Origin: Bugula neritina | Lineage: Eukaryota; Animalia; Bryozoa | Reading direction: 5' to 3' | Length of the DNA: 64,000 nt | NCBI GenBank assembly: GCA_964035545.1 | Contig: OZ037765.1 | Location: forward strand, 11,666,698 to 11,730,697 | Shown here: in pieces, positions 39,680-64,000 of the stretch | How the letters are laid out: each line of letters begins with the position of its first letter | Numbering within the stretch: the first letter of the stretch is position 1 | Notes under the pieces: generated by a model | The model's database searches: none | The model's input: the letters and a program-made list of their open reading frames with translations, nothing else | Told to the model about the DNA's origin: nothing | Position numbers and translations under genes: made by a program

Positions 39680-42600
39680 TCATACTTCAAAAGCGGGGAA
39701 CTTTGACGCAGCAGGACTTAAGATATCGTACAGGAAGTATGCGGTACCAGCCATTCCTACAAAAAGCACTAGCAAATAAAACACTTCAAATCTACAACAT
39801 TGTGCGTATTTATTAGTTCTACTAACAAAAGGCCTTAGGAAAATCCTACCTTCAAATAAAGAGTACGGCCTGTCCGGTGTACGACACCCATGTCGCCCAT
39901 AATCACAGCACCACAAGGCAAACTGAAAAAAAAAAACTTTCAGAAAGTAAAGTTATGCTCATAGACCAACTGCAATAGTTTCAGATATTATTTGATGTCT
40001 TCACAAGGTAATTGGATATTACAATGTAAACTTGAAAGTTGAAAATAAATATAATATCAAATATGCCAATATCCGACTCTTTGAGAGCAAATTCTACTAA
40101 CTTACTAAGTAATAATAATAGATTATGCAATAGCATAGTATTACAAGTCTAGCACTTTAGCTCAAATCTGTGAAGCTGATGAAATGAAAAAAAATTAATG
40201 AGCTGAGATTCGGCAAGTGCTAATTTATTTTTGTGTTGGCAAAATTCTGTCATAAAATATGTATTAGACAGAAACACAAGTATTCTATAAACTTGATTTA
40301 ATATTAGCATAATATAATAATTACCTGACAAGCTCTGTGAAGATGCTTTTTATCTTCGGAAAGCTTGTAGAGACTGAGAAATGTGTATGCGTTCCCAGCA
40401 ACACCATGGCAGATTCCATATCCTTTTTTTAATAACCCTCTTTTCCAAACAACATCCCCGCATGCCATGGCTGCCTGTTTGTAATTTTCATTCTTGTATT
40501 TCTACAGCAAGAATAAGTAGTTGCTCAAGCTATATCATAAATGCCTTAAAAATTCATGCAATATAACAAAATTAATCATATCTTAGTGCCTAACTAGACA
40601 AAACTAAGGGCTTCATAAAACTGATTGATTGATTTATTACATATCACAAACATGACAACACGTTGCAAAATTCAGTGTAAATACTGGCTATAATAAGTAG
40701 GAATGAACAAAAATAAGAGAAAAAATCAAAACTCTGTTGGATTATTTAAAATAAAAGCTCATTTAAAGTATTTACAAGATGCCGCAAGAAGCTATCTCTG
40801 CCCCATGCCCCTCTATATTTGATGGTTCGATATCTTCCAGAAGGGCATTGACTAAGAAAGTTGTTGATGAAATGGTCATTGTCTGTTATATATTTGATGG
40901 CAAGTTCTTTAGTGAGTTTCTGAATGTGCAAATCAATGTTTAGATACTTAATTCCGAGTTTTGAGCAATCTTTGAGAATTCTTCGAATAGCCTTTTTATC
41001 ACTGGCATAGATACAAGTAAAAATAGTAGGTAGACAATAGGCGATGCGGGACATGATGAAACTTTTGAATAGCATATTTGCTAGAGGTTTAGAGCTAAGA
41101 TACGCAAAATTCTTCACAATATACATTCTTCTTGATGCTGTTGTTACTACTGATTGTACATGTTCATGAAATCTCAAATTCTGATCCACTAACACACCAA
41201 GATATCTCACTTTTTCAGACAATACAATGTTTGTTCCATTCAATACGAGAGTAGGGGTATGAGGTTTAGCACGTTGGGTTGAGAACATCATTTCTTGGGT
41301 CTTGCTAGGGTTTAATAATAGATTTAAATCATCACATTGCTTAGAAATTCTTTTAATCTCGTCAAAGTAAATATTTAGATCAGACTGTTTGCCAATGCAG
41401 CCAATAATGCAAGTGTCATCTGCATATTTAATTACGGTGATGTTGCTCTGGCTTGAGGTAATCCTATTAGTGTAGATAGAAAACAATAGTGGAGATAAAC
41501 AGCACCCTTGGGGAGTTCCTGTGTTAGTTATGATTGGATTTGATGTTATGCCATCCACTACTGTGCGCTGTACTCTGTTTGTAAGAAAGCTGTAAATCCA
41601 CTCAGTAACATTGGAGTCAAGATGAGTTAGTTGCGTAATGAGGTCTGGAATAGATATAGTATTGAATGCAGAAGAGAAGTCTAGAAAGAGGCACCTTGCG
41701 TAATTGGATGCTTTCTTATCAATGAAACTTGTCACAGTTGTAGTTAGACATAACAGCGCATCTTGTGTAGAGCGATTTGTACGATATGCGAACTGATATT
41801 TGTCCATAGGTGTATAAGTTATAATGTAGTGTTTGATGAGCCTTTCCAGCATTTTGCATATACAGCTTGTGAGAGCAATTGGACGATATTGTTTAAGTAG
41901 TTCAGGATTTTTGACTTTAGGAAGTGGCTTGATCATTGCAGATTTCCATGAATTTGGAGTTGTCTTAGATTGGATGGAGAAAGTAAACAGTTTTGTAAAG
42001 ACAGGTGCTAGTTGATAGCAGCAGATTTTTAAAACTTTCGGAATGAGACCATCAGGACCTGCACCTTTTCGTGAGTTTAGTCCCTTTAGCTGTTTGAGAA
42101 CAGCGTCTTCTGATATTTCCAATGGAGGTGCACTGATAATGTTTCTATCAAAAACAGGCTGATGAGATATAGGCTTTTCATATCGGGTGAAGAAGGTATT
42201 TAGGTCATCAGGTGTAAATGGGTTAGCTTTAGCAGTAGTTGTCTTGCTGTGTGGTAGACCACTTATTTTCTTTATATCAGTCCATGCTTTGGCTGGTTGA
42301 TTTACTAATTGTAGTTGAATTTTCTTAGAGTAATTAACTTTGCTGTTGGTTATAGATCTGGTGATGTCACGTTTGAGCTTATTATATAGTTTACGGTTTC
42401 CATCTTTGTGGGCTACTTGTTTTTGATAGATCATTTCTGTAATATGTTTAGTAATCCAAGGTTTCTGATTGGTACATGTTCTGAAGCTTTTCGTGGGTAT
42501 GCAAATATCTGTGCAGAAGTTTATATAGTCTGTTACAATTTCAGTTTGTTGATGGATGTTATCATCATCAGAGAGCAGATTATTCCAGATAGTAATGTCC

Positions 42601-45600
42601 AATGCTGCTTTCAGCTTTTCACAGTTCTCTTCAGAATATATACGTCTGGTGACTCGAGTTGGTTTGTATTTAGATAATGGTGTGTAGGTTGGTATGAGAT
42701 GTGTTATAAAGTGATCTGACCCACCAAGCTTTGCAAGTTGATGGCATTGTTTGAAGGCATCTTTGATTCTGATATAGCATTTATCAAGAATTTTATTGTT
42801 GCGGGTAGGTGTTTTGACTGTTTGATAGTATCCATCAAGTTTAATCGGAAGCTGATTAAAGTCTCCCATTACAAAAATGCAAGAATCAGGGTGCTTTTTT
42901 TCTAGTTCTTTAACATGTGTTGATATTGTTTTAGCTGTGGATGAAGCATTTTGTTTTAGTCTAGAAGCACCGGTGAAGGGAGTATAGCATGAAACAGTGA
43001 TAATTGAAGTAAACTCTCTTGGAAGCCAGTCAGGTCTTGATTTAATTGTCATAATTTCACAGTGATTGTCCATATAGTTGAATATAAGATTGTTATTTGT
43101 TGACCATTTGTTGTCAATATAGACTAGAATGCCTCCTCCACAGGTTTTACCGCTAGCATCTGGAAGTCTGTCCATACAGAACTGCTCATAACCTTCAAGC
43201 TCAGTTCTTGAATGTAGCACATCTGGAGTAAGCCAGGATTCTGTTATACAAATAAGCTGAGATTGGTTACTAAGTCTTTTAGTTTTAAGGAGACCATGGA
43301 GTTCGTCGAGTTTATTTCTTACAGATTGTGCATTAGTGAGCACAACTGCAGGTAGTGGTACTTTACCAGTTTTAGTACTGTGGTTGACTCTAACTCCGCC
43401 ACGCTTGCCCCTCTTTCTAGATCGAAGAAGTCTCGGATCAATAACCTTTACTGCGTGTTTGTAGTTAGTGTTCCAAATATCTTTCAGCTGATGTCGAGTC
43501 ATAGAGCTTTTAATATCCAACAGAGCTTGATAATCCATAATAATATGTTCAAGGCCTTTCACTCCTCTTGGCTTGTAAATGAGGGTGATTATAAGCCAGC
43601 ATAAACAAAGGCTGCAATAACTGCGCCACAATGTCAACAGTAAAAGCATTACAGAGAGCATTGAAAACACAACCTCCCTCTGCGAGAGCCAACTGCCAAA
43701 CAAATAACAAATTAAGCAGCGAGTAGAGAGAATTGGCTTAAGTTTTAACAGCATTACTTAAAATCGTAGATCTAAAACTTATCAAGAATAATGCAGATGA
43801 AGTTTTAATCAAAAGATAGAGACCTAACAGCTAGCAGCGACTAGTTTAACATTCAGTACGCCTCCAACTTCCATTTTTTAACAGTTGAGCGACAAAACAT
43901 AACCAAATCTGCTAAAAGGCAAATTTTGATAAAATTAACATACAAGCCGAAAATGTCAAACCACAGAATATAGAATGCCAATAATGGGTTTGAACGTACA
44001 GAGCAGTGTGGGAGGGAACCCTTCTTAACTAGGTCAACTTTAAAAAAGTGGCTGGATAGTGAGCTTAGCATAAGAACTCATACCATACTACACAGGGGAT
44101 CCCTTGCTAACACTGTTCAGTTGTACTTGCCATCAGCAAGCAACTTTAGTTAGAATGAGTTTTGTTCACTTATAGTTTGTTATATAATATTTAGGTTACT
44201 TATTATAGTAGACCAAAAAACCGGATATGATTATCATGTAATGTTATTTCCTTTACACTAGCTAAATTTTTATATAGCTAAAATTTTAGTTTTACTTGAT
44301 TAAAATTGTACTAAATGAAATGTTGCTAATCTTCAGTTAATGATATCTATAGTTTCATACACAAAAATACATTTTACTATATTAAATAACAAGATTCAGG
44401 AGGGCCCTTGTTGCATCAAAATCTGAATGTTTCCTGTTTGTAAGAAACATCATTCACTCTAAAGTCTCTACTAATTAATATTAAATTAAAATTGAGCAAG
44501 TTTTGTTAGCATAAACTAACCTGATAGGCTGCAACAAGCATATTCACAAAGCCAGGTGCTCCATGACACCAGTGAACAAGTCTATCTCTTTCACCACTCT
44601 CAAAAGAAGATGGGAAGTTACCAGAAGGAAATTGTAAATCAACTAGATAGTCTATCGTAGGTATCAGCAGAGAATCTATATTCAATTCAGGATATTTGCA
44701 GACAACCTACAAAGTAACTCAAATATTCTAAAAACACGTTAAAAAACCACCACAAACAAAAATGGTGGTAAATCAGTTAAAACAAAGTTGAGTTGACAAC
44801 AAAGATGATCAGTTCATGTTATAACTCTCAATAAAATTCTGAGTTTAGCTATAATATACTAGAAACATTTTAGATTAGTAATTAATTTTATTACTAACCA
44901 CATAGTATAAAACTATTCTCAAATCTATAAAACCAAAATATATTTGCGAATGACCAGTCTTCAAGTTCGCCTTTAATATAATTTGAGCAACGCTGGTATA
45001 GTATTCAACAGCAAAGTTTTTCATATCTGAGTTCACTAGTACCTTAAGCAGCAAATATATTATGCCAGCATAACCATGTGCTGCTCCATAGTATTGCTTG
45101 TCATGCCAAGTGAAAAGCAGAGGCAAGCTTTGTCTACAATTCTTAGCAGCTTGTGAACCACACATAACAATGGCTTGAGCAACCTTTGTTGGAGAGAAAA
45201 ATTAAAGCAATTATCACAAAAATGTAAAAATAACACTCATCACTTGATTCCTCAGACTTCAAGCTAGATAAACATTAAATAAATTCTAATTCTTATTTCT
45301 TTATTTATTGGTGACAATTTTTATTGTGAAAAGTAGCTAAAAGCTAGAAATGAGAAATCAAGTGATGATATAAAAGGAATCAGTGAGTCACCTTAAGCAG
45401 CAAGTAGATGATACCAGCATGGCCATGGGCGGCCCCAGTGTAATACTCATTATACCAACTGTACATTAGGGGGCATCTACTCTTTAACTGTCCAGATAGC
45501 TGATGGCCAAATTTAACTATGGATGTGGCTACCTGGTACAGCCAAAGATTGAGATATATACAAGTTAGAAAACATCTGAACAGTAAAGCATGTTTTTTTA

Positions 45601-47502
45601 TTTCTAATTGCAGCATTCACATATTTTTTGTTTCTAGCAACTAGCAAAACAAACATGATAAATATTAAACTAATGGTTAAAATCGGCTTTAATGATTTTA
45701 CGATTAAATGTTACATTTGTTAGTATTTAAGATTGAATAAAAGTGTAAACAGATCTATTTCACATTTTGTGAAAAGTATAAAACTTTTGTAGAAGCACCT
45801 ATATGGCTTGCTACCTCCCCCCAATAATTGAAATTATAATCTATCGTATGTAACTCTTGTATTACTACCATACTTACATTTATTATGCTCTGTTTGCTGA
45901 TAGTTGTCTCCCCTAACTCAGTCTGTAGTAACAACAGAGTGTATAAGTAGCCAGCCCGACCATACAGCAGCTCATTAGGTAAGCTAGAGCTTTCACACAC
46001 TTCTTTTTCCATTTGAATAATCCTAGTGAGCAAACCAGACATACAATGACATCAGAAATTTTCCTTTTCAAATCCAACACCAATTTGTGCAGTTTCAGCC
46101 GCCTTACATATTCTTTCGTTAAACTGAATCGCATTTTATGGCCATAGTTCTATAATTTGGCATTAATTGTTGCTAATATAAATGGAACCAGCAACATGAA
46201 ACATTGAATATGTATCAGAGAGCAAGTGTAAACCCTAATGCAATATGTTACTGTATCTTATAAACCTGGCAATACATTGATCTCTTTGGGTGATGTACTG
46301 AGTACCAAGTCTGTTATATGCCAAAGCAGCCACTGCCAACGGACCACAGTCTCCACACAGGAAGGTACAATCTTTATGTTTACCTCGCAAATGTTTAAGC
46401 GATGCTTGTACTAAATCTAAAGCTTTCTGGGAGTTTCCTAACTTTAGGCAAAGCAATGCTACACCTGTAAATATAAGAACATAATAATTACAAAACACTA
46501 TAAATGAATAACATTACTCTACATTCGAGACAGTGCTTATTAATGCTGAACAAAGGGCATAATGATGGCAACAGCTGGATTTGTCTTCTCATTCTCAGCT
46601 GCAAAAGCTTTTATAATAATTACTTATTGACTGTTGCTCTCGAAAGTTTAAACTTCGATTCTATTGGTTAGTAGTGTTTTAGAGATATGAGTATGTCTAG
46701 CAACTCATGTTGATAACATTACACTAACAAACTGATTAAACTGATGATGGTATTCAGAATTCTCATCTATCAATTGAGTCTAAAGAACCTTACTCTATTA
46801 CTCAATAAACTGTACAATTATAACTTAAAATACTTCAAAGCTACAGCAGTCAGGGATTAGAACACCCTTGATTAATTAAATATATCCAGCAAAACTATTT
46901 TAGCTTCTGCATTCTACTGAATACTAGTTAATAGTATAAACCTGACAAGTTTATTCAACTGCATATTAGTATTACACTAGTGGAAGCATAAATTTATGAA
47001 TTGAGTGTAAACTATCTTTAACGAAAATTTTAGCCTGCATGCATGTCTCTGATTTATGAGGATACAACACATACTGTAACTTGGACAATTGATCAGACAA
47101 ACCTGAGTAGCCAGTATACACGCTGTAGTCATTTCCATCAACAATAGAGGGATTAGAATAAGCTGCCATAACTTCATTCAGCATCTTGTCTGCAAACGAT
47201 CTTAACTTTGCACTGTAGTTTTCACTCAGACACTAAAATTGTAAAATTTAAACATTGTGAAAATAAATATTTATTATCTAATATTTTTCTTAAAATTGCG
47301 AGCAAATTTGTCACAATAGTTTAAATTTGCAATTTAAAATAGTAATAGCATTTTTATTGCAAAACCACTGAAACATAAGTACGCAATAATATAGAAAGTA
47401 AAACTATTTGCATACTTCACCAGAACTGTCCAACAGGCTATCCACAATACTGCCATAATCAGGTAAATGATTTACAAAAGCTTTTTCATCTATGTTCTCC
47501 AT
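39680..47502 (-). CDS. LANCL2: LanC-like protein (LANCL1/2 family), 404 aa when one of two alternative exon-5 copies is used
   Basis: Exons 47502-47416, 47232-47103, 46464-46266, 46022-45878, [45532-45392 or 45183-45043], 44706-44521, 40501-40325, 39922-39850, 39756-39680. Motifs [58 protein letters not shown] and GICHGVAGN (Zn ligands C, C, H), [19 protein letters not shown]. Constitutive exons look closer to LANCL2 as I recall it. Confidence 0.95.
40622..44024 (-). mobile_element. Apparently full-length non-LTR retrotransposon, Rex1/Babar-type, in LanCL intron 40502-44520, same orientation as host
   Basis: Uninterrupted APE+RT ORF; 3' end on minus strand reads AATAAA overlapping (AATC)3 at 40640-40622. 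5' boundary approximate; no convincing TSD. Confidence 0.9.
40746..43754 (-). CDS. LINE ORF: apurinic-like endonuclease + reverse transcriptase (1002 aa)
   Basis: True ATG at 43754. KRGKRGG; endonuclease motifs [37 protein letters not shown]; RT motifs [50 protein letters not shown]. Confidence 0.95.
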   Translation of the reverse strand: MLLKLKPILSTRCLICYLFGSWLSQREVVFSMLSVMLLLLTLWRSYCSLCLCWLIITLIYKPRGVKGLEHIIMDYQALLDIKSSMTRHQLKDIWNTNYKHAVKVIDPRLLRSRKRGKRGGVRVNHSTKTGKVPLPAVVLTNAQSVRNKLDELHGLLKTKRLSNQSQLICITESWLTPDVLHSRTELEGYEQFCMDRLPDASGKTCGGGILVYIDNKWSTNNNLIFNYMDNHCEIMTIKSRPDWLPREFTSIITVSCYTPFTGASRLKQNASSTAKTISTHVKELEKKHPDSCIFVMGDFNQLPIKLDGYYQTVKTPTRNNKILDKCYIRIKDAFKQCHQLAKLGGSDHFITHLIPTYTPLSKYKPTRVTRRIYSEENCEKLKAALDITIWNNLLSDDDNIHQQTEIVTDYINFCTDICIPTKSFRTCTNQKPWITKHITEMIYQKQVAHKDGNRKLYNKLKRDITRSITNSKVNYSKKIQLQLVNQPAKAWTDIKKISGLPHSKTTTAKANPFTPDDLNTFFTRYEKPISHQPVFDRNIISAPPLEISEDAVLKQLKGLNSRKGAGPDGLIPKVLKICCYQLAPVFTKLFTFSIQSKTTPNSWKSAMIKPLPKVKNPELLKQYRPIALTSCICKMLERLIKHYIITYTPMDKYQFAYRTNRSTQDALLCLTTTVTSFIDKKASNYARCLFLDFSSAFNTISIPDLITQLTHLDSNVTEWIYSFLTNRVQRTVVDGITSNPIITNTGTPQGCCLSPLLFSIYTNRITSSQSNITVIKYADDTCIIGCIGKQSDLNIYFDEIKRISKQCDDLNLLLNPSKTQEMMFSTQRAKPHTPTLVLNGTNIVLSEKVRYLGVLVDQNLRFHEHVQSVVTTASRRMYIVKNFAYLSSKPLANMLFKSFIMSRIAYCLPTIFTCIYASDKKAIRRILKDCSKLGIKYLNIDLHIQKLTKELAIKYITDNDHFINNFLSQCPSGRYRTIKYRGAWGRDSFLRHLVNTLNELLF
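45043..45183 (-). CDS. LanCL alternative exon 5b (LANCL2-like)
   Basis: ttttctctccaacaaag acceptor, 141 nt, phase 0/0, [50 protein letters not shown]|gtacta donor. Confidence 0.85.
45237..45368 (-). promoter_or_regulatory. Intronic RNA stem-loop between LanCL exons 5a and 5b (candidate splicing control element)
   Basis: Arms 45237-45254 (tcatcacttgattcctca) and 45351-45368 (tgagaaatcaagtgatga) are reverse complements at 17/18 positions; the mismatch is a G-U pair in the minus-strand transcript. Regulatory role is inferred. Confidence 0.65.
45392..45532 (-). CDS. LanCL alternative exon 5a (LANCL1-like)
   Basis: cag acceptor, 141 nt, phase 0/0, [50 protein letters not shown]|gtgact donor. Confidence 0.85.
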
Positions 47503-51112: not shown

Positions 51113-52543
51113 GTTCAGTAATCATTCTACTTGAAGTTCATTGGCATTATGATTATGATTATAATAGGTTGATTGTGATTATCATGATTGTGACTCACTT
51201 AATAAATGAGGTTTAGTCATCATTAAGAATATGATTATGTTTGTTATTATTCTATAAGTATAAACCATATTAAATTGATGACTGCCACCTAAGGGCTAAG
51301 GCTAAACCGCTACCTATGACTATGAGTAAGACCTTTATTTATCCTTGAATTGCATGTTACTTAAGTTTAACTTTAAAATTACTCAATGAATATGACGATT
51401 AGTAAGAATTATAATAATTACTGTATTTATAAAATTAAACCACAAGCTCAGGTTGATGCTGTGATCATCTCATTATGATCATGGCTGTAAAATATAACTA
51501 AAATAAATTATTCAAGTATTGTTATTAGAATTACTTTTATTTATGATAATAATCAATTATTATTTTTGTTACAAATACTATTATATTTATATATTTAGTT
51601 ATTATATTTATTAAATTTCATATTTGTTAATATAAGTATTATTTTATAAATTGATTGGCAACTATTGTGACCTTGTTTTCATTTATTTTAAATCATTAAC
51701 TTAAATGGTAAGGGTTAAACTAATTTGGATTATATTTATAAGATTAAGTAGTCTCAACATACACTCACACACAGGGAATCACTAAAAGGTAAAGTAGATG
51801 TAATGATTAGTCTTATTCGTATGCTCTATTCTTATTAGATTTAGTTTTATTCTTTAATTCTTAGTCTATCTAGTTAAAAACAACTACATTTTTTAAAGGA
51901 TTGTGCTTCTACTTCTAGAGCATACTAAGAATGTTGAAGTAAATGTAAGTAAATGTATTCATATCTCCATGCTCACATTGACTTTGAGCTTTGATTAATC
52001 AATTCGAATTTAAGCTTTCTTTAACTCATAGCCATTACTGTACTCATAGTGTAAGACTAATTTAAACTATACTGTTAGCAATATTGAAGCTATAATTCAC
52101 TAAGATTTTAGGTGAAAAGGTAGTTATAAGAAAACATAACTTCTAAAATGGTCAAACTAGATCAGCAATCAGTCAAGAAGAAACAATAAAGATCTTAATA
52201 CATTTACTAAACTTTGAAATATTAATATTGAGATCCGAAATTTTTTTTAGTGTATTGATGTCTGTCAGGGTATGATATAATAAAGAATCTTGCATGCTAG
52301 TCTATATAATGTTATGCTTACAAGGCACACCAATTGCTTTGTGTTTTAGACTGATCTAAATGAATTTACCACCAACACAGATTCTGGTAGACAAATAAAA
52401 CAGGTATCTTTTCATCAATAAAGTCAAGTCTTATGTATGAATTGTAATGGTTGTTATTAAAGTGGTGTTTCGTAGTGCTGAGCTGTTATATTGAATTATA
52501 AGTTATATACTTAAATATTGTATTTTAGAGACAACAGCTCAGA

Positions 52544-55500
52544 ATGTATACTTACCCAATCCTGCCTAGACAATCCAGCCTATCACTTCTAACACTATTT
52601 ATTTTTACCCTCACCATATTTTACACACACGCTTTGGATGAGGGGGCTCATTACACAGACACTTGGGCTGTAGAGTTTGATGCAGATCTCAGTGAAAAAG
52701 AAGTTGATGAAGTTGCTCATCAGTTTGGATTTGAAAACAAGAGAAAGGTACTCGTATATTTAAAGGGTTTAACTCATGTTTGTTTGCTGTTGAAGTATTT
52801 ATATATCAATGAGCTGCAAATCAATATTAATGCTCGTTTAATTTACTGAATGTGTGGCTGTTAAAACCAAGTTCTGTATAAGCTTAGCTCCCTAATTAGG
52901 AAATAGTCTGAGCTAAGCACAACTTAACGAATATTTCAGCTTCTTTTCATTCTTGTAACTTAACTTCTATATTGAAAGTGTTAACGGTTGAAGCACAGGT
53001 CATCAAACAGTTGTTTTATATAATACTTATGGCATATATATAGTTCAATATCACCTAACATATGGTTGAATGCTACAAACAGTTCTGTTGAATTTCATAT
53101 CTAATAGTAAAGGCAGTTGATATAATCTTTAGTAAGCTGAATATTAAATATATATTTTTAAACTAGTATAAAACTTCTTGCACTTTAAAGTCTACCATCA
53201 TTTCAAAGTTCTATTAAAGATTCAATTAATTTGTCATCACACTTTTGTTACATATTAGCGTAATATAGCTTTACGCAGAAGTTTAATATCGAGCTTTAAA
53301 GATTCAAGTGACTTATAACAAGTTTTTTTGCATTCCCATAATGAGACTGCTATTGAAGGGTCTATGTCCTTTGTATTTGAATACATTATTGCCTTTCAAG
53401 CACATATTGATTGTATACCATTGTATTGCATAATTAACATCAGTAGACACAAGGATTTTATAATGCTATAGAAATGAAGTTTTGATACTTTTCTATGATT
53501 TTTGTAAGCTTGTTGTAAATGAATTACATTTGATTTGTGAATTAATGTATTATATAAATTAATTTGCTTAGGTTTATAACGGTTCTGCAGAAAATAGGTA
53601 TAGGCCTTATAATTTGCTAAACACATTTAAGTCAGTACTAAGTACTTATAGCAACTATGGCGAGATAATAGCACTATTTTCTTGAAACTGTGTTTATAAT
53701 CATTCTCGTGTAACAATAGTGATATGGTATTTATGCAATCATGATTTGAGGGTCTTATTATTTTGTCACACCATTTTCATAAGAATGTTTGCGCTTTCAG
53801 TTGTTTGAAGACTTGAATATTTATGAGTTTTATCACCCAAGAGTATCGAAAAGATCTCTGAGCAGTTCTGATGAGCACACTGGACTCCTTTCTAACCACA
53901 ACGCCGTAAGTCTGCCTCTATACTGATTTTATCATCACTCACAACACAAGTGTTTACTGAAGCTAACTGAGACATTGTTTTATTTTATATAGTGATTTGA
54001 TATTTTAGGTGATATCAGCAGAGCAGCAGATTGGTAAAATAAGAAAAAAGCGAGACTACAACTCTGAACAGAGCATTACATTAAATGATAAATATTGGAA
54101 ACAAACGTGGTATTTGGTATGTTCTTTTAGCTTTATTTTACCTGCTAATGTAGCATTAATGTTATGTTTTTAAATTGATAAAATATACACATTTTATTTA
54201 ATTGTTTGTTATGGCATGTTCTGTGGAAGTTGCAACAATTTTGTATTTTTCTTCCTGGTAATTTAGAATAGAGGCGCCGATGGCCACTCGTTTGATATGA
54301 ATGTGATACCAGCCTGGCTGAATGGTTTTACTGGTAAAAATGTTGTCGTCACCATTTTGGATGACGGAATTGAAAAAAATCACCCTGATTTGAAAAGGAA
54401 TTATGTAAGTCAGATCAATATAATTAAATGAACAAATATAGTTTAACTGACGAATTATTTTATTACTATTACTTTTTCAGCAGTCACTTGAAAATGTTTG
54501 TCTTGAGTTTTTCTCAAAAATATGTTCAGTTTCGCTATAAATTTATTCAAATCTCAGTGTGTTGTCTGTTATTGATGTTTAAAAATGATATTTATTGAAG
54601 AAGATTGCAGTGTTAATTGGTTTATAACTGCTAATCTTAGAATATTATCGCTGGATCCCCCAATTACAGCAGAATATTCTGTAGGATCCTCAAGCTAGTA
54701 CTGATATCAATGGCAATGATGATGATCCCCAGCCAAGATATGACTTCAGCAATGAGAACAGACATGGCACGAGGTGTGCTGGTGAAGTAGCCGCTGAAGC
54801 CAACAATTCTATATGCAGTGTCGGTGTAGCCTACGATGCTAGTATTGGAGGTTAGTGTGCGCAATACAGACGCTTGATTTCATTATCAAGTAAAAACACT
54901 TGGGTATACTTTTTAGCTAGATGTGAATAAGTGTAACTTAAGTTGAAGTCTTGAGCAGTCCAAAGCAACTATAGACTATATTTCAAATAGTATGGTTATA
55001 GAACTGTAGCCCCTACTGCCATAATCCATGTAGGTAGTAGTAGTTTGTGTTCAGCTCTATTCATGCGGGTGTTGTTTACTGAGACTTCCATTAGATTATT
55101 GATCAATATTGATTTGAAGTGTCAGATTAATAGACATTTATTTGTCATCTTCAAGGAATTCGAATGCTGGATGGCAGTGTAACGGATGTAGTCGAAGCAC
55201 GCTCTCTCAAGTTTAACCGAAATCATGTCGATATATACTCAGCAAGTTGGGGACCGGACGATAACGGCCGTACCGTAGATGGCCCTGGAAAGCTGGCTAC
55301 CAAAGCTTTTGAAGACGGTGTGGCACAGGTTAGTATTTTATATGCACTTGAAGGACCCTGCAGTAGATATTATGTATAACACATCATAATTAGTATCTAA
55401 TTCAATATGATGATTATGTATAGGGCCGGAATGGCAAAGGCAATATATTCTTGTGGGCATCGGGAAACGGTGGAAACCATCACGATTCATGCGCATGTGA

Positions 55501-58500
55501 TGGCTACACGAACAGTATCTACACTCTGTCAGTGAGCAGTGCCTCTGAGAGTGACACCAAGCCTTGGTATCTGGAACCATGTGCCTCTACATTGGCTACA
55601 ACTTACAGCAGCGGCGCCACTGGAAGGGAAAAACAAGTAGGCCAAGTTATAGGGCTTTTGTTTTATACACGTGTACATTTAAAAAGGTTTTTTAAATACA
55701 GACTTTCTGTCACTATCCTACAATAATTTAAAATATCTTTATATATTGATGTCAAATATCATTTCCACATATTATATTTCCATTTTGTATTTTAGATAGT
55801 TACGACGGATTTAAGAAAAATGTGCACAACCAGTCATACAGGCACCTCAGCATCTGCACCTCTGGCAGCTGGTCTCGTCGCTGTTATGCTTCAAGCCAAG
55901 TATGTTGGCCATTCAATAAAACTTGTTGCTAATAACTTGCAGGTAGTAATTCCTTAAAATCTAGTCTCACATATTAACATATATTTCTGTTGCCAGTACA
56001 AATCTGACGTGGAGGGATGTTCAATATGTTACAATGGCTGCTGCGAACCCGGAACCACTTCTCAGAGCTGGGGATTTCAAAACTAATGGAGCTGGTAGAA
56101 AATGTGAGTACTGGTGTCTACTGGTTGCTGTGAAATGCTTTGCTTGTCAAACCTCGTGTACTGCATAGGCTATATTAACTTGAATTTTCAACATTTTTTT
56201 GCAGAAATGATTTTGAATATAGCATACATATACATATTACTGAGTTTGGTTGAGTGAAGCTGTTTATTCATACCAGCTTTTTTGTTGTCCTGTAGTTTTA
56301 GTTACAATATTTTTTCGTAAAAATATTTCATTTTCAAAATTTCGAATTTTTTTCTGGTTTATTATTCTGTATAAACATTGTATTTTAATGGCTATGCTTT
56401 TTTAGTTTTTATCAGATTATTAGCAGTTTAAAGATTTGTCCAACCATAATTTGTGACGACATTCAATATCCGTTAATTTTTTGCAGCATAAGTACTGTCA
56501 GCAGCATCTCATTCAGTGTTGTTACTGCGTTGTTCTAGTTAGCCACAAGTTTGGATATGGACTAATGGATCTAGGAGAAATGGTGGTTCTAGCTCAGTCC
56601 TGGAGAAGAGCTCCAATTCAACTAATAAAGCGCTTGCCGAAAGTAAATCCAGACGCGTATGTTAAATCTACTCTTGCAACATTTTAAAACTTAGAATTAT
56701 CAAAATTTTATCAAGAACATAAAACATAGTACTATCTGATTTTCACAGTTTCAAATTGTAGCTAACTCATACGTGATTGTTGGATTTTTTAGCAATTTGA
56801 GGAAGAAATATACAAAAACACTGCATGTGCCATCTTGCTCAAAGAATGATATGGGTTGTATCAGGTATCTAGAACATGTTCAGCTGGTGCTCACGATGAA
56901 ATCGATCAAAAGAGGTCATTTGACAGTAAGTGTTTTGGGATAACAAGCCAGCTCTGCTATTGGATATTACCTACATGTAAACTTGAGGGTGGCGGTTAGA
57001 CCAGCCACACTAGCTTCCTTCTATGTACACCCTTTTGTGTAATAACTTTTATTTGTAGTGTTCTAGCTTTGCTTTATATGATAGTCAAATTTGTTGAAGT
57101 CAAATCTTCTACTAACCTACAGACTAGATGTGAAATATGATCAACTGTTAGCTAATCAGTGTGCACACTTTAATACATACAATCATTGAATACCCAGGTC
57201 AAGATTAAAAGTCCAAGAAATACAGTGTCGACATTACTGCCTGTGCGAAGTTCAGATATCTTGTCTGCTGGATTCACCGATTGGCCATTCATGTCTGTAC
57301 ATTTCTGGGGAGAAAACCCATCTGGAGATTGGGAATTTGAAGTAGACAATGGGAATATGAATGGCATGTATAGGATTTAGATTTTATATACCTTTAGATA
57401 ACTTAGTTGTGACAAGTAACGCTTTTTGTGAAATCTTTTGAGTTGATACACTGGCACTCCTGCAGTCTATTATTACTTCATGTGATCATGGTAACAAACT
57501 GTTTGAACATGTTACACGCAGCATTTTTAATGCAAGGATATTTCTGCCATTTCGAAGTGACATGTGGCTGTAGTAATTACTTGTGAAGTACAGCTATCGC
57601 TAATGCTGGAAGTAATGATGTTACAGGAGAACTCAAGTCTTACCAACTTGTACTTTATGGCGTCTCGGTTGATCCGTTTGACAAGAATAGACCAGAGTTA
57701 CCGGATGAGATCAGCTGCCACCGGACATGCGCTGCCTCCACTGACTCCAATCTGGCTTGCTTTGGCTCTGGACCTGATCAGTGTAAGAAATGCAAGAGTG
57801 AGCTGTATCAAGTGGAGGACACAAAGTAAGATATGGTTTTATTATCCCCTACCTTATGTAAAGGAATGTAATTTATGAATAGGATAAGAAACCTCTTTCA
57901 CTGTTTGCTTTTGTATTATTTGCTTTTTGTTTTCTTCGAGATTCAGGTTTAGTAAAAACTCATGATGCATAAAATTTCTTCAACTTACTTCCCTGTTTGC
58001 ACTTTTATTATCTTGCACCTATTGATGATATATTCCTTCAACGATCTTAAAGTTAATTTATTTTTTTGAAAGTATTTCAAGCTTTACGCTAATATATAAC
58101 TTGTTGAATTTAAAATAAAAATAAAATATCATATATAATATATCTAATAATGTTGATTAAAGTTACATGAACTTTGCAATCACTACTCCAAATTTTGCAT
58201 GAGTTTATAACACATTGAGAACTGTTTTCAGTGTAATTACAAGGTAAATAATGTTTTGTTGATAGTTGTGCTGCTTCCAGTTAAACCTTGTTTTCTTAGT
58301 TTTCGTTTTGTTGAATTGTTCTTTTTCTATCAAGTATTTTGATTATTCTATTTTATACGCAAAGACTACATTGCTTGCTTTTTATTAAAAAGGCCCAAGC
58401 AGTTTTCGATTTCTGCCAAAATCATGTGAATATCTTAGAATAGTTATGTTATTTCTAGTTATTTGAAGCTTATTTCCGAAACTGTTGTTAGAGAAAAGAA

Positions 58501-61500
58501 CTATTTCAATATAAATTGAGCTCAAGTCTAAATTGTTGAATATAACACTATTGTTTTGCATCTTATTTGATTATTCTAGTATGTGTGTCGAGGATTGTGG
58601 CAAGGGCTATTATAAGAAAGTTTCTGAAAAACTATGCGCACTGTGCGACAAGTCGTGTGCCACTTGCTCTGCTGGAGGTGCGACATCGTGCACTTCCTGT
58701 GAAGGTGAACTGCTGTTAGACAGTGAAGGTCATTGTTCTGATGAGTGTCCCACTGGATTCTTTCCTGGTTAGTAGTGTTGGCTGTTGTACAGCTATGCAA
58801 CTTTAATCTGGAGGCTTGAAACGTGATTTAAATTGTTGAAAAGTTTGTCTTCCATTTTGTACGAAAATTATTCTAATATATTTTGTACCTTTTTTGCTGT
58901 GAGTAGAATTTTTTAAAACTGTGCCTGCCGTAAATAATATGTGTGATGCCATTAAATTATGCATATCGAAATTATAATCTATATTTATACTATATTTAAA
59001 ATGATACTGGGAAGTTTGCACCGCTCTAACTGTAAATAATCAACCTGAATGTTATCATCTGCAACCAATATTTGACCAAATATAATCTCAAAGTTTTGCT
59101 GTTTAATCTGCTGTTTCAATCGGTCATATGTTTTGAATAAAAATATTGGATTTTTGTTTTGTTTTTAGGCCCTTAGTAGCGAATATTCTAAAAAGTGCTT
59201 TGTTCAGTAAATGATTATTTAATGATTGAAAACACATGATGCTTTTAATAAATTGAATCTAAATACACTGTGTATTAGGAGCAGTTCATGTTATAAATTA
59301 TATCATACCATATCATATTTTACACTAAAATTATTTTTTATATTTCAAACAAATATCATTTCTAGTATTTTAGATTAAAGAAAATGGTTATAGTCACTTT
59401 TGACATTAGCTTTTGTATTTTTGCTGCATCTTAATTTGGCTAAAATAATAAATACAAGTTTTAATGTTTTGAAACATGTCAAATGTTACATCATTTCAAT
59501 CAATATAGACAGAAATGTGATGTTTCAGTTATGTTATATAAATGTTGTGAACACCTTCTGTAGCAAGTATGTTATGTTTACAGCACCAGATGCCAATGCT
59601 TGCCACGCTTGCAGTGATAAATGTACGAACTGCGTGTCGCTACACGATTGTTTAAACTGTGGCGCTGGGTTTGAAGTTGTGAAAGGAGAGTGTAAGGAGC
59701 TGTGTAAAGACAGGTATGATACATATTCACACCAGCAGGTGCTATATGGTGCTTTATCTCAACCATATACTTGCCGTTTACACTATGAATATTTTCTTGC
59801 AGCTTTTTTTCAATTTCTCTAACTCCATATTTTGTGACAATGAATTTAAAATTCAAAATAAGCTGCATGTGCTTATCTGCTATTACACAATAATGCCTGG
59901 TTGGTGCTGTAAGTGCTATGCTACTATCAGTATGATTGTTCTAAACACGCTGTTGTTTGTTGACACTGGTGAAATTGTATGTAGCAACTATATATAATAT
60001 ATTAATTTCATTTGCTGTAGTGATTTTTCTTCTGTCCTGTTAACAGAGCAATTACTAAGCAACTTTCTAAGGTAGTCTCAGATTTCTAGAATTTAAGACA
60101 AGTTGGAAACTAAGTGAAGATTACTCCTCATTCTTACTGGGATACCCAGTTTATCAGTAACTGTCTCTTATTTTATCACTCTGTAGCATTAGCTCTATAA
60201 AATAATGCCTAGTTCTAAATGTCAGGAACTGCAGCATTAGCTTTGATATTGTATAAAATAATGCCCAGTTATAAATGATATATAATAATTGCAAACTTAT
60301 TGGCATTTAATGTACAAGACATAAGTGTTGGCATTATTATTGTCTACTATTTCCACATGCTTCACTTCTTTTGCAGTGAATACAGAAATGATGAAGATGA
60401 ATGTGTGTCATGTGAGAATACCAACTGTCTAGTGTGCACTGGGCCACACACCTGCGTAGGCTGTAATATCGGTTACTTCCTCTACCACGGTAACTGCACT
60501 CAGAAGTGTCCTCAACAAACATACATCAAGAAGACTGGCCGTGACAGTGGACAAGATGAATGTCACGAGTTTGTTATATGCAATAATTCTTTGTGGATAA
60601 ACCTTTATTACTGACCTGTGTTGTGTATAATAGTGCAGATTTTTGTTTCTGCTTTTCAATTTATATTAGAGCTATTTTCTATACTAATCGTTCATGATAG
60701 GTCAACTGCAGTTACAATCTATTTAAGTTTGTTAACATAGATTGTGATGAAATCGATTTGGTTCACACATAGTGTCTGTGTATGTTACAGTTGCCACGAG
60801 AGCTGTGAAACATGTAATGATGGTCTGGATAACAATTGTCTGTCTTGTTATGATCTGTACCAGCTGAGTTCCTCCCACAAATGCATACGCAACTCTACGT
60901 GTGAAGTGGGGAAGTTCAGGGAATTGGATATCGGTGACTGCGAACCCTGCCATTCCTCGTGTCAGACATGTCACGGGGCGGGGTCTCTCGACTGTACTTC
61001 CTGTCATAATGAAACGTAATTTAAGTCTTGAATTTCGTTTACACTTTCACAGTTTTTTGTCCGAAATTCAATTTGACCGAGTTAAAATTCCGCCGAGTTG
61101 CATTGCTTTGTAAAAGCCACTTGAGTCTCTGCTGTTCCACACACCCTGGCAACTTGTGTTTCTTTTCTTGATTTTTTTTAGTCTTTTAGTTTTTGAACTT
61201 GCATTTACAAAACCACCATCTCTTTCACTTTAATCTGTAGACTTTCTATAAATTACAGTTATTTAAAAGATGGCTCATGTGTGAAGGAGTGTGGTGACGG
61301 AATGTTTAATTACGTCGATGGGCATGACAATCACGCTTCTTGCCAACATTGTCATCCATCTTGCCTTAGCTGCTTTGGTGAGAAAGATAATCAATGTCTG
61401 AAGTGTCCTGAATTTATGGAATTAGTTGATGGGAAATGTAATTCAACCTGTCCCACAGGGTAAGAAAGCACATTACACTACCTTACCAGTTATACTAGGG

Positions 61501-64000
61501 TGCAATGCAACACTTAACTGAGAGTTGTATCACACTGTATGTGTATAGGAACTTAAACGTGTGATGTAAAGTTTTTGCTGCTTATGGAATAAACAAGTTT
61601 GTAATGCACTGGATACTTATAGCAAACGTGTATTGATAATAAATTGGTAACCCACATGTGCTATTACTCACTCAGTCATATTTAGTTCTACATAAGGTTA
61701 AAAGTAGTGATTTCAACCTTTTTTTAGGACATACATTTATAAGAATAATGATAAAAAGGAATGTCGAAATTGTTCGAGGACATGTTCAACCTGCAGTGGT
61801 CCATCTGAAGCAGACTGTATAAGCTGTGAGGGTGAAAAATCACTAACACAAGGTATAGTATATGCCTCTGACTGCTTGAAATAAATGTTTGGTATGCAGT
61901 GTAGACACTTGGTCAATGTGCATGCACAAAGCTGTCTGGCAAACGGAAAGTTCTGCAACATCTTTAGTTGTTTCTATACCAACAAAACTATTTTGCATTT
62001 TAGAAGGAAAGTGTGTGACCAAATGTGAGGATGGTTACTTCAAGAAAGGCTTGTCTATGGAAGGAATGCAAACTGATTACGTTTGCCATCCTTGCAATCT
62101 CCGCTGTGCTACATGTAAAGGTGATTTTATAATTTTAATATGCAGTCTAGTTGTAGCAGTTATAGTAGGAGTTCTCATTGTTAAGAAGCTGATGTCTGTA
62201 AGAGTAGATTTTGTCGTAATACAGTTACTTATCTTTTGATCCGAGTTGTTGGGACTCTTTATTAAGTTTACAAATTTACAAAAGTTTGCAAATTCTAATT
62301 GATAGAAGCAATTTTTTATCTCCAATAAATGTTGCTGTTGTGTTATGTGTCTGAATATTAAATGTATGTGTAAATTGGAAATCATTATCTTTAATCCCTT
62401 TAATATTTCGTGTAAAGCAGGTGTGGAGGGATTTGTTCTTTGGTTGTATTTGCTAGTTTATAAATAATACCTGCACCTACGCAGAGTTTATTGTATTTGT
62501 TGTATAATTGTGAAGTTGCATGAGTAAGGTGGTTTATTCCCATGTCCAGGAGAGCTTTCTTCAGAGTGTCTCTCGTGTCGTGATGGTGATGTGTTGTTCC
62601 AAGGTCATTGTAAAGAGAGAACTCAATGTTACGACAGTCAGTACTACAATGCCACAGCCAATGTGAGTTATAGCTATTCCTGGCTTACAACAGCCATTAT
62701 TCAGAGTTTGTAGGCCATAACAGGGCTGCTTTATGAAATATAGTATGTGAATGTTGTAGACACAAATAACTTTATTCACTTCTCTGACTATGAATTGGGT
62801 TATCTAATTATCCACTTCATACAGTTGCAGGTGAGGGTTAAGTATGAATACAATGGATACTGTTACTCATTTATTATCATATTTGTTTATTAATTTATGT
62901 AAAATGGGGGTTTTGCTATTGAAAAGGAAAATAAAATGCATGTTTTTGTTGGAGCTATAGTAGCTAGCATACCAGTTACTACAGTTTTCTGGTTGGCTTT
63001 CACTAATAGGAGTGTCTAAGTTGCAACAGCATGTGTGTCAGCTGTGTTGGACCAAGTGAGCATGAGTGTACCTCGTGTGCACCTGGACAAGAGCTCTACC
63101 CAGATACCAAAACCACTTCTTCATCGCCTACAACTCAACGTCCAGTTGGAAAATGTGTTTTGTGCTGCTCTAGTGACCAAACTGACCCTTCTCTTTGCTG
63201 TGATTGCAGTCAACATGGTAAGAACTTGTCACATCTCCACATATACATTTATTCTACAGTATATAAACTAATAGAACTGCTCTTTGATGGACAACAACGC
63301 TATAGTGTATTGCAGTATTTTAAGCATTTTCCAACTACTAAATCCTAAGTAGGCCTAATGGTTACTTACATAGCAACTTACACTGGCATTTTACTGCTGG
63401 CCATTTGACTATCATGTGGAATTTACTCATACAAATATGTGTCAGGTTTCCATAAATTTATTGAATACGCTTGGAGTAGAGTTGCAAGTTTGTAATTTGT
63501 ATTCCACTTTTTGCAATAGAAGTTATTGTGATACATTTAACTTGGTAGGTCGTCTTGCTTTTTTAGAAACTACTTTTATGATTTATTATTTTCATTGAGT
63601 ACTCATAAGTTTTTTACAATGTAAGCACTAATATATTGTGGTATATTTTCGAAATTGCATAAAGTCTCAGGCCTAAATATGTTTTTCTAAGTCGATTTAA
63701 TTCAAAGTGAAGACAGTTTGAAATATATTTTTCTACAGGTGATCACCCATCTCAACTTAGTCAGCTAAAATCTGTACTTGAGAAATGGTAACAGTTGTTC
63801 GTATAATACTCTAAACTCATCCACATTCTTTCTATTATAGCTTCACTGCACTCTTTTCATAACAGTGACGTCTATTTCTTTCATAATAATCTTCTAATTT
63901 CTAGGTTCTCCAGTCTGCGGAAGCATCGATCAAAAGAAAGCCACTACTAAAAGTGTTGAATCTTTGACAATAGAACAACATAGACCTTTCATATCTATTG
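52544..64000 (+). CDS. PCSK5: Proprotein convertase, PCSK5/furin-2-like (S8 kexin family) with long Cys-rich region; 3' end beyond window
   Basis: Exons 52544-52747, 53801-53905, 54009-54116, 54267-54404, 54685-54850, 55156-55328, 55424-55636, 55796-55899, 55997-56103, 56539-56656, 56793-56925, 57198-57363 (GC donor), 57594 (or 57627)-57825, 58580-58767, 59584-59713, 60377-60568, 60791-61015, 61241-61459, 61728-61852, 62004-62120, 62550-62662, 63010-63217, 63905-end. Signal peptide, prodomain (YTDTWAV, RVSKR, RKKR|D), triad ILDDG / HGTRCAGEV / GTSASAP, oxyanion WASGNGG, P domain ([25 protein letters not shown]), CxxCxxxCxxC furin-like repeats, CC..CCDC juxtamembrane motif. Confidence 0.93.

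What the first reader, a model, noticed from the sequence alone, without database searches (positions are those of the whole stretch)
45043..45532. One LanCL gene carries two tandem active-site exons, one LANCL1-like and one LANCL2-like: candidate mutually exclusive splicing switch
Seen: two exons of exactly 141 nt, both phase 0/0 with intact splice sites and open frames, 24/47 aa identical, many synonymous differences but GAAHG and AGIIYLLLK conserved, so both look selected and the duplication old. Using one gives a normal-length 404-aa LanCL. Knowledge (recalled, needs checking): human LANCL1 reads PLMYEWYQEYYVGAAHG and LANCL2 reads PLLYQWHRKQYVGAAHG; exon 5a reads [17 protein letters not shown] and 5b [17 protein letters not shown], matching at the diagnostic positions M/L, WY/WH and EY/KQ. 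The His in GAAHG is the active-site His of LanC/LanCL enzymes, which add thiols such as glutathione to dehydroamino acids. Inference: an ancestral bilaterian LanCL may have made acidic-loop and basic-loop isoforms by alternative splicing, later partitioned into LANCL1 and LANCL2 by reciprocal exon loss after vertebrate duplication. I know of no description of this.
Basis: partly seen in the sequence, partly recalled or inferred. Interest (0 to 1): 0.92.

Follow-up and report, generated by a model that had tools for sequence, protein, structure and literature searches.

The report
Recurring two-state switch in LanCL enzyme
This animal's only LanCL enzyme gene splices in one of two duplicated active-site exons, and the two-residue difference between them (His-x-Lys versus Tyr-x-Glu) also separates vertebrate LANCL1 from LANCL2 and seems to have evolved again in at least six lineages, which gives a simple test of why animals keep two forms.

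Summary
Observation confirmed. The single LanCL1/2-type gene has two 141-nt phase-0 exons (5a, 5b), each with the catalytic His. Three other bryozoan-like species keep the pair, with 28-46-nt introns too short to splice; here the intron is 208 nt with an 18-bp stem. LANCL1 and LANCL2 share a 2-residue insertion that 5a and 5b lack. The likeness rests on two sites. Outside them 5a is closer to LANCL2 (52%) than LANCL1 (46%). Hemichordate, annelid, bivalve, tick, damselfly and termite genes have one exon. AU tests on 47 columns do not formally reject the model. The better reading is convergence: the coupled H-x-K / Y-x-E pair (172:1 and 1:52) recurs by exon duplication (bryozoan-like animals, stick insects, one unidentified animal) and by whole-gene duplication (vertebrates, gastropods, a mite-like animal). 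Function is inferred only. No paper found; the scan had noted only this intron's stem, nothing on other DNA.

The parts
45392..45532 (-). Exon 5a, 141 nt, Y-x-E form (WYNE); catalytic His codon 45425-45427; CAG acceptor; spliced to exon 4 in all four RNA runs
45043..45183 (-). Exon 5b, 141 nt, H-x-K form (WHDK); catalytic His codon 45076-45078; uncommon AAG acceptor, also AAG in the three orthologous loci; spliced to exon 4 in two of four runs
45184..45391 (-). Intron between 5a and 5b, 208 nt (180 nt in the strain of runs X1/X2); single copy in the genome; seen unspliced in RNA; stop codon in frame at its fourth codon
45351..45368 (-). 5' arm of an 18-bp intronic stem (17 Watson-Crick pairs and one G-U)
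45237..45254 (-). 3' arm of the 18-bp intronic stem
45383..45387 (-). Branch-point-like CTCAC at intron positions +5 to +9, matching CTAAC at the same place in the 28-nt intron of L011; use not shown
47416..47502 (-). LanCL exon 1 (coding part from ATG)
47103..47232 (-). LanCL exon 2
46266..46464 (-). LanCL exon 3
45878..46022 (-). LanCL exon 4; its donor joins either 5a or 5b
44521..44706 (-). LanCL exon 6 (WCHG: zinc Cys and enolate-stabilising His)
40325..40501 (-). LanCL exon 7 (GICHG zinc ligands, GSH-binding Lys)
   Evidence: (loose end of exon 6 contigs)
39850..39922 (-). LanCL exon 8
39680..39756 (-). LanCL exon 9 to stop codon

Best explanation
A lineage-specific tandem exon duplication, old within this animal group (probably cheilostome bryozoans; inferred), gave the single LanCL1/2-type gene two mutually exclusive versions of the exon that carries the catalytic His and the beta-turn before it. 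SHOWN: both exons are spliced to exon 4 and no 5a-5b joint is seen; both are under purifying selection in four species. INFERRED: exclusion is steric, because the intervening intron is 28-46 nt in three relatives; here an 18-bp stem shortens the 208-nt intron to about 50-75 unpaired bases or a donor-proximal branch point is used; 5a is the default and 5b (weak AAG acceptor) is regulated. SHOWN: the two forms differ at a coupled pair, W-H-x-K (common state) versus W-Y-x-E, and the same pair separates duplicates in vertebrates, caenogastropods, a mite-like animal, stick insects and an unidentified animal. INFERRED: these are independent origins, and the pair is a charge switch on the active-site face that changes which protein substrates or partners the enzyme prefers, or tunes the catalytic His, without touching glutathione or zinc binding.
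For: RNA bubble with two 190-nt contigs in X9 and X11. Orthologous pairs in L011, L016/L017/L019, L096 with 28, 46, 31-nt introns; steric limit about 50 nt (PMC7969005). pN 0.11-0.23 against pS 0.50-1.04. Stem z -2.97, unique in genome. Coupling H-basic 172, H-acid 1, Y-basic 1, Y-acid 52 among non-independent proteins. Outside the turn, Y-forms are 59-76% identical to own-lineage H-forms and 47-53% to other Y-forms in six of seven lineages. One clade of all Y-forms rejected without the turn columns, AU p 0.004. Whole-gene duplicates group by lineage at SH-aLRT 97-99. Vertebrate-only 2-aa insertion. W and K/E bridge a two-residue turn in a pLDDT 95 model of the hemichordate homologue.
Against: The bryozoan-like pair is as far from each other (47%) as from other lineages (48-50%), and direct AU tests of lineage versus type grouping are not significant. 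The formal independent-pairs test found only 3 informative pairs. The product-bound LanCL1 structure shows no contact between substrate flanks and the enzyme (PMC9934072), so the functional step has no direct support. A TTAAT motif about 20 nt before the 5b acceptor could be an ordinary branch point in this species.
Confidence: 0.7

Rival explanations
1. One reading: the bilaterian ancestor had both exons; most lineages lost one, and vertebrate LANCL1 and LANCL2 each kept a different one after gene duplication.
For: 5a and LANCL1 share Y-x-E, 5b and LANCL2 share H-x-K. Tandem pairs occur in more than one protostome lineage. AU tests do not reject 5a+LANCL1 (p 0.17; 0.14-0.36; 0.52 in a noisy search).
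Against: It needs the same 2-aa insertion twice in vertebrates. H-x-K is the common state in plants and invertebrates, so the 5b-LANCL2 likeness is uninformative. 5a is 46% like LANCL1 and 52% like LANCL2 outside the turn, while LANCL1-LANCL2 are 59% alike. Single exon in hemichordate, tubeworm, pearl oyster, tick, damselfly, termite and gastropod loci; exon order reversed in Timema. Gastropod and mite-like pairs show the switch can arise anew.
Confidence: 0.08
2. The exons are mutually exclusive, but H-x-K and Y-x-E are two structurally compensating states of a beta-turn with little functional difference; what is selected lies elsewhere in the exon (the variable N-terminal half) or in regulation of enzyme amount.
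For: No substrate contacts outside His277 and His219 in the LanCL1 product complex; LANCL1 and LANCL2 both accept many substrates (PMC9934072). Tight coupling is also expected of a compensating pair. Most 5a/5b differences are in the N-terminal half.
Against: Duplicates keep one copy of each state again and again, by two different routes, while the single-copy loci examined mostly hold H-x-K or H-x-S/T. Neutral toggling would not predict that.
Confidence: 0.2
3. 5b is a minor or decaying copy, or both exons are often included together.
For: No 4-5b junction in X1/X2; 5b evolves faster and its loop length varies (135-141 nt) among relatives; one related contig (L029) has a broken pair.
Against: 4-5b contigs at depth 27.9 versus 47 (X9) and 10.1 versus 9.3 (X11); unbroken 5b contigs imply no 5a-5b joint in those graphs; purifying selection on 5b in four species.
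Confidence: 0.02

Closest known systems
Mutually exclusive tandem duplicated exons with steric exclusion (OGDH 4a/4b, PMC7969005; reviewed in PMC9741552 and PMC5740500)
   Same: Equal-length homologous exons, one included; donor-to-branch distance under about 50 nt; a stem in the intervening intron; the swap alters a functional site of an enzyme.
   Different: Not described for LanCL in the papers searched. In relatives the whole intron is 18-46 nt instead of holding a distant branch point. Branch point not mapped here.
Eukaryotic LanC-like proteins LANCL1 and LANCL2 (PF05147; PDB 3E6U, 8CZK, 6WQ1)
   Same: All catalytic motifs present (GAAHG His, WCHG, CHG, GSH-binding Lys and Arg regions); the two isoforms carry the same turn residues as LANCL1 (Y210, E212) and LANCL2 (H255, K257).
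   Different: One gene with two exons instead of two genes; lacks the vertebrate 2-aa insertion; neither exon is shown to be orthologous to one vertebrate paralogue.
Recurrent tandem exon duplication (for example Dscam; PMC3342872) and partition of homologous exons after gene duplication (recalled, not checked here)
   Same: The same exon duplicated independently in several lineages, suggesting selection.
   Different: Here the same two-residue change recurs, and it is reached by both exon and whole-gene duplication; the partition history itself is not supported.

Membership tests
Mutually exclusive tandem duplicated exons | Adjacent homologous exons of compatible length and phase | tested here: met
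   141/141 nt, phase 0/0, 24/47 aa
Mutually exclusive tandem duplicated exons | Each exon joined separately to the flanking exons in mRNA | tested here: met
   4-5a and 4-5b junctions listed; joints to exon 6 inferred from 190 = 28 + 141 + 21 nt contigs
Mutually exclusive tandem duplicated exons | No double inclusion and no double skipping | tested here: inconclusive
   No 5a-5b or 4-6 joint in four contig sets, but contigs drop rare forms; no raw reads offered
Mutually exclusive tandem duplicated exons | Both exons under purifying selection | tested here: met
   pN 0.11-0.23, pS 0.50-1.04 on the last 28 codons among four species
Sterically enforced exclusion | Branch point within about 50 nt of the upstream donor | tested here: inconclusive
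   Necessarily true for the 18, 28, 31 and 46-nt introns of other species; for this 208-nt intron only motifs and a stem were seen; lariat mapping not possible
LanC-like (LanCL) enzymes | PF05147 match with catalytic His, zinc ligands Cys/Cys/His and enolate His | tested here: met
   residue roles from PMC9934072
LanC-like (LanCL) enzymes | Glutathione addition to dehydroamino acids | not testable with these tools
   needs an assay
Ancestral exons partitioned into LANCL1 and LANCL2 | 5a groups with LANCL1 and 5b with LANCL2 in an exon tree | tested here: inconclusive
   Never the best tree; lineage grouping preferred by 3-8 log units in four constrained tests, none significant; free trees
Ancestral exons partitioned into LANCL1 and LANCL2 | No derived exon-5 characters shared by LANCL1 and LANCL2 alone | tested here: not met
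   Both carry a 2-aa insertion absent from 5a, 5b and nearly all invertebrate exons aligned
Ancestral exons partitioned into LANCL1 and LANCL2 | Tandem pair present in invertebrate deuterostomes and broadly in protostomes | tested here: not met
   Single in Ptychodera, Ridgeia, Pinctada, Ixodes, Hetaerina, Batillaria and termite-like loci; Branchiostoma gene intronless (uninformative); lamprey, hagfish, tunicate and echinoderm DNA not examined

The most novel reading that the evidence does not exclude
H-x-K / Y-x-E is a functional two-state switch at the rim of the LanCL active site. Animals have rebuilt it at least six times, by mutually exclusive exons or by gene duplication, and these two residues account for much of the biochemical difference between LANCL1 and LANCL2.
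Probability: 0.4. Interest if true: 0.82.

Novelty: new variant of a known kind. Interest (0 to 1): 0.66.

Why it matters
Why animals keep both LANCL1 and LANCL2, and what their natural substrates are, is unsettled (own knowledge; both accept many substrates in vitro per PMC9934072). A gene whose two isoforms differ in one 47-residue exon, and a two-residue pair that recurs whenever this exon or gene is duplicated, reduce the question to a two-point swap that can be tested in any LanCL. It is also a clear case of exon duplication and gene duplication reaching the same protein change in separate lineages.

Tried and rejected
Transposon origin of the intronic stem: intron and arms are single-copy. 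Nonsense-mediated decay as the means of exclusion: double inclusion stays in frame, so it cannot act. M/L and Y/Q as diagnostic sites: they vary without regard to type. Pinctada's extra motif copies as alternative exons: they are partial tandem repeats of the exon's 3' half. The mite-like L025 pair as exons: two whole intronless genes. Single-sequence structure prediction was too weak in the loop; no coordinates were available, so distances to the active site were not measured. The 2009 and 2021 LanCL structure papers were not held; two LANCL2 docking papers do not mention these residues. Sample accessions of L004, L011-13 and L096 were not found in papers, so those organisms stay unidentified. 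A few peptide hits look like mammalian LANCL1/2; their contigs were not fetched, though the peptides sat in the bulk motif profile and tally and may be among the LANCL1 rows without a species name in the exon trees.

Full report
OBSERVATION. Both match Pfam LANC_like. The genome has one LanCL1/2-type locus. Nine exons with one copy of exon 5 add up to 1215 nt, 404 residues plus stop (arithmetic only; the model was searched exon by exon and never joined). The source is not given. A 216-Mb genome with symbiont-metagenome RNA runs suggests a cheilostome bryozoan such as Bugula; this is inference from memory.

RNA. Four contig sets were laid on exons 1-6; spliced joints show they are RNA. Exon 4 joins 5a in all four. 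Exon 4 joins 5b in X9 and X11, which come from two studies. In those runs each exon lies in its own 190-nt contig (depths 47 and 27.9; 9.3 and 10.1). The length fits 28 nt of exon 4, 141 nt of exon and 21 nt of exon 6, and the exon 6 contig begins with the few letters the two exons share. The joints to exon 6 are therefore inferred, not printed. An assembled 5a-5b joint would have split the 5b contig; none is listed, nor is a 4-6 skip. X1 and X2 look like one data set filed twice: they show 4-5a only, plus a low-depth unspliced piece of 5a end, intron and 5b. Contigs cannot show rare forms or give true ratios.

CONSERVATION AND EXCLUSION. Three further species with closely similar exons keep the pair in the same order: L011 (intron 28 nt), L016/L017/L019 (46 nt) and L096 (31 nt). 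Both exons are under purifying selection, pN 0.11-0.23 against pS 0.50-1.04. Those introns are under the roughly 50-nt donor-to-branch limit cited in PMC7969005; an ordinary short intron in L096 is about 60 nt. All four species give 5b an AAG acceptor and 5a a CAG or TAG, which fits 5a being the default. In the window the intron is 208 nt. It folds an 18-bp stem (z -2.97), is single-copy, and starts GTGACTCAC against GTGACTAAC in L011. With the stem closed, 23 nt remain on the donor side and 53 nt (25 nt in the X1/X2 strain, which lacks 28 nt) on the acceptor side. Either a donor-proximal branch point or this shortened geometry could keep the exclusion. Neither is shown.

HISTORY. The recalled vertebrate motifs are right, but the likeness reduces to two sites, the first and third residues after the Trp. 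In quartets the 5a-LANCL1 versus 5b-LANCL2 signal comes almost wholly from those columns. H-x-K is the common state in plants and invertebrates, so 5b resembling LANCL2 says nothing. LANCL1 and LANCL2 share a 2-residue insertion in this exon that 5a, 5b and nearly all invertebrate exons lack. Without the four turn columns 5a is 46% identical to LANCL1 and 52% to LANCL2, and LANCL1-LANCL2 are 59% identical. Full loci of Ptychodera, Ixodes, Ridgeia, Pinctada, Hetaerina and Batillaria, and termite-like loci spanning exons 4-6, have one exon; the Branchiostoma gene is intronless. Free exon trees put 5a and 5b together with moderate support (96/84 with a long mite-like branch inside; 92/78). The partition model is thus unlikely, not disproved.

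WHAT RECURS. The two sites are tightly coupled: among distinct motifs in the fetched proteins, His goes with Lys/Arg 172 times and with Asp/Glu once; Tyr goes with Asp/Glu 52 times and with Lys/Arg once (sequences are related, so this is not a probability). Both states occur side by side after exon duplication in the bryozoan-like group, in Timema stick insects (order reversed, 5.4-kb intron) and in the unidentified animal of L004 (18-nt intron). They occur after whole-gene duplication in vertebrates, in caenogastropods (two Babylonia genes) and in a mite-like contig with two adjacent intronless genes (L025). Plant sequences show both states too, but whether they co-occur in one genome was not checked. 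Outside the turn, each Y-form is closer to H-forms of its own lineage (59-76%) than to other Y-forms (47-53%) in six of seven lineages; the bryozoan-like pair is equidistant. One origin for all animal Y-forms is rejected once the turn is masked (AU p 0.004; p 0.18 with it). Whole-protein trees without this exon group the gene pairs by lineage. L004 and Timema might share one origin if L004 is an insect; the count of about six origins is an estimate.

FUNCTION. In a confident model of the hemichordate homologue (pLDDT 95) the exon spans half an outer helix, a loop and the inner helix that begins at GAAHG; the Trp and the Lys/Glu form a beta-bridge closing a two-residue turn that begins with His/Tyr, seven to nine residues before the catalytic His. 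PMC9934072 assigns His219 as the acid and lists glutathione contacts, none from this turn, and sees no specific contacts to substrate flanks. The most likely role, by inference, is a charge switch on the active-site face that biases protein substrates or partners, or tunes the catalytic His. I put this step at about even odds; a structurally compensating pair with little effect is the main rival.

COMPARISON AND VERDICT. The arrangement is a member of the known class of mutually exclusive tandem exons (OGDH 4a/4b is the closest mechanism) in a bona fide LanCL. No paper on LanCL alternative exons or on this residue pair was found in the searches run, which miss most subscription journals. Novelty: new variant of a known kind.

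Noticed in passing
window:40749-43757 (-): A LINE-type element with a 1003-codon endonuclease plus reverse transcriptase frame sits in LanCL intron 6 in the gene's own orientation; RNA contigs join exon 6 to exon 7 across it.
   Followed up: partly
L009:3700-4750 (Pinctada imbricata LanCL): About seven tandem copies, spaced near 160 bp, of the 3' half of this same exon with its donor follow the real exon; some have frameshifts. It shows the exon is prone to local duplication.
   Followed up: partly
L025:2026-4654: Two adjacent intronless LanCL genes in a mite-like AT-rich contig, one H-x-K and one Y-x-E.
   Followed up: yes
L004:1391-1690: Tandem exon pair separated by only 18 nt, in frame, in an unidentified AT-rich animal that also lacks the intron between exons 3 and 4.
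   Followed up: partly
L015 and proteins P0003, P0151-P0155: Public Timema gene models join both alternative exons into one protein, probably an annotation error.
   Followed up: partly
L029:100-400: A broken copy of the pair in a species like L016: deletion in 5a, lost 5b acceptor, His replaced in 5b; pseudogene or low-coverage assembly error.
   Followed up: no
L007 (Branchiostoma floridae): The amphioxus LanCL1/2 gene has no introns, suggesting a retrocopy replaced the parent gene.
   Followed up: no
P0286 (Scleropages LANCL1): An exception to the coupling: His with Glu, and GVAHG instead of GAAHG.
   Followed up: no
window:46023-46290 and 46439-46679: Intron-containing RNA contigs in LanCL introns 3 and 2 in some runs; retained introns or pre-mRNA.
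   Followed up: no
window:19600-28600 (+) and 52500-63400 (+): Neighbouring genes: a RhoGAP-domain gene and, by eye from the translated frames, a furin-like proprotein convertase with Cys-rich repeats.
   Followed up: no
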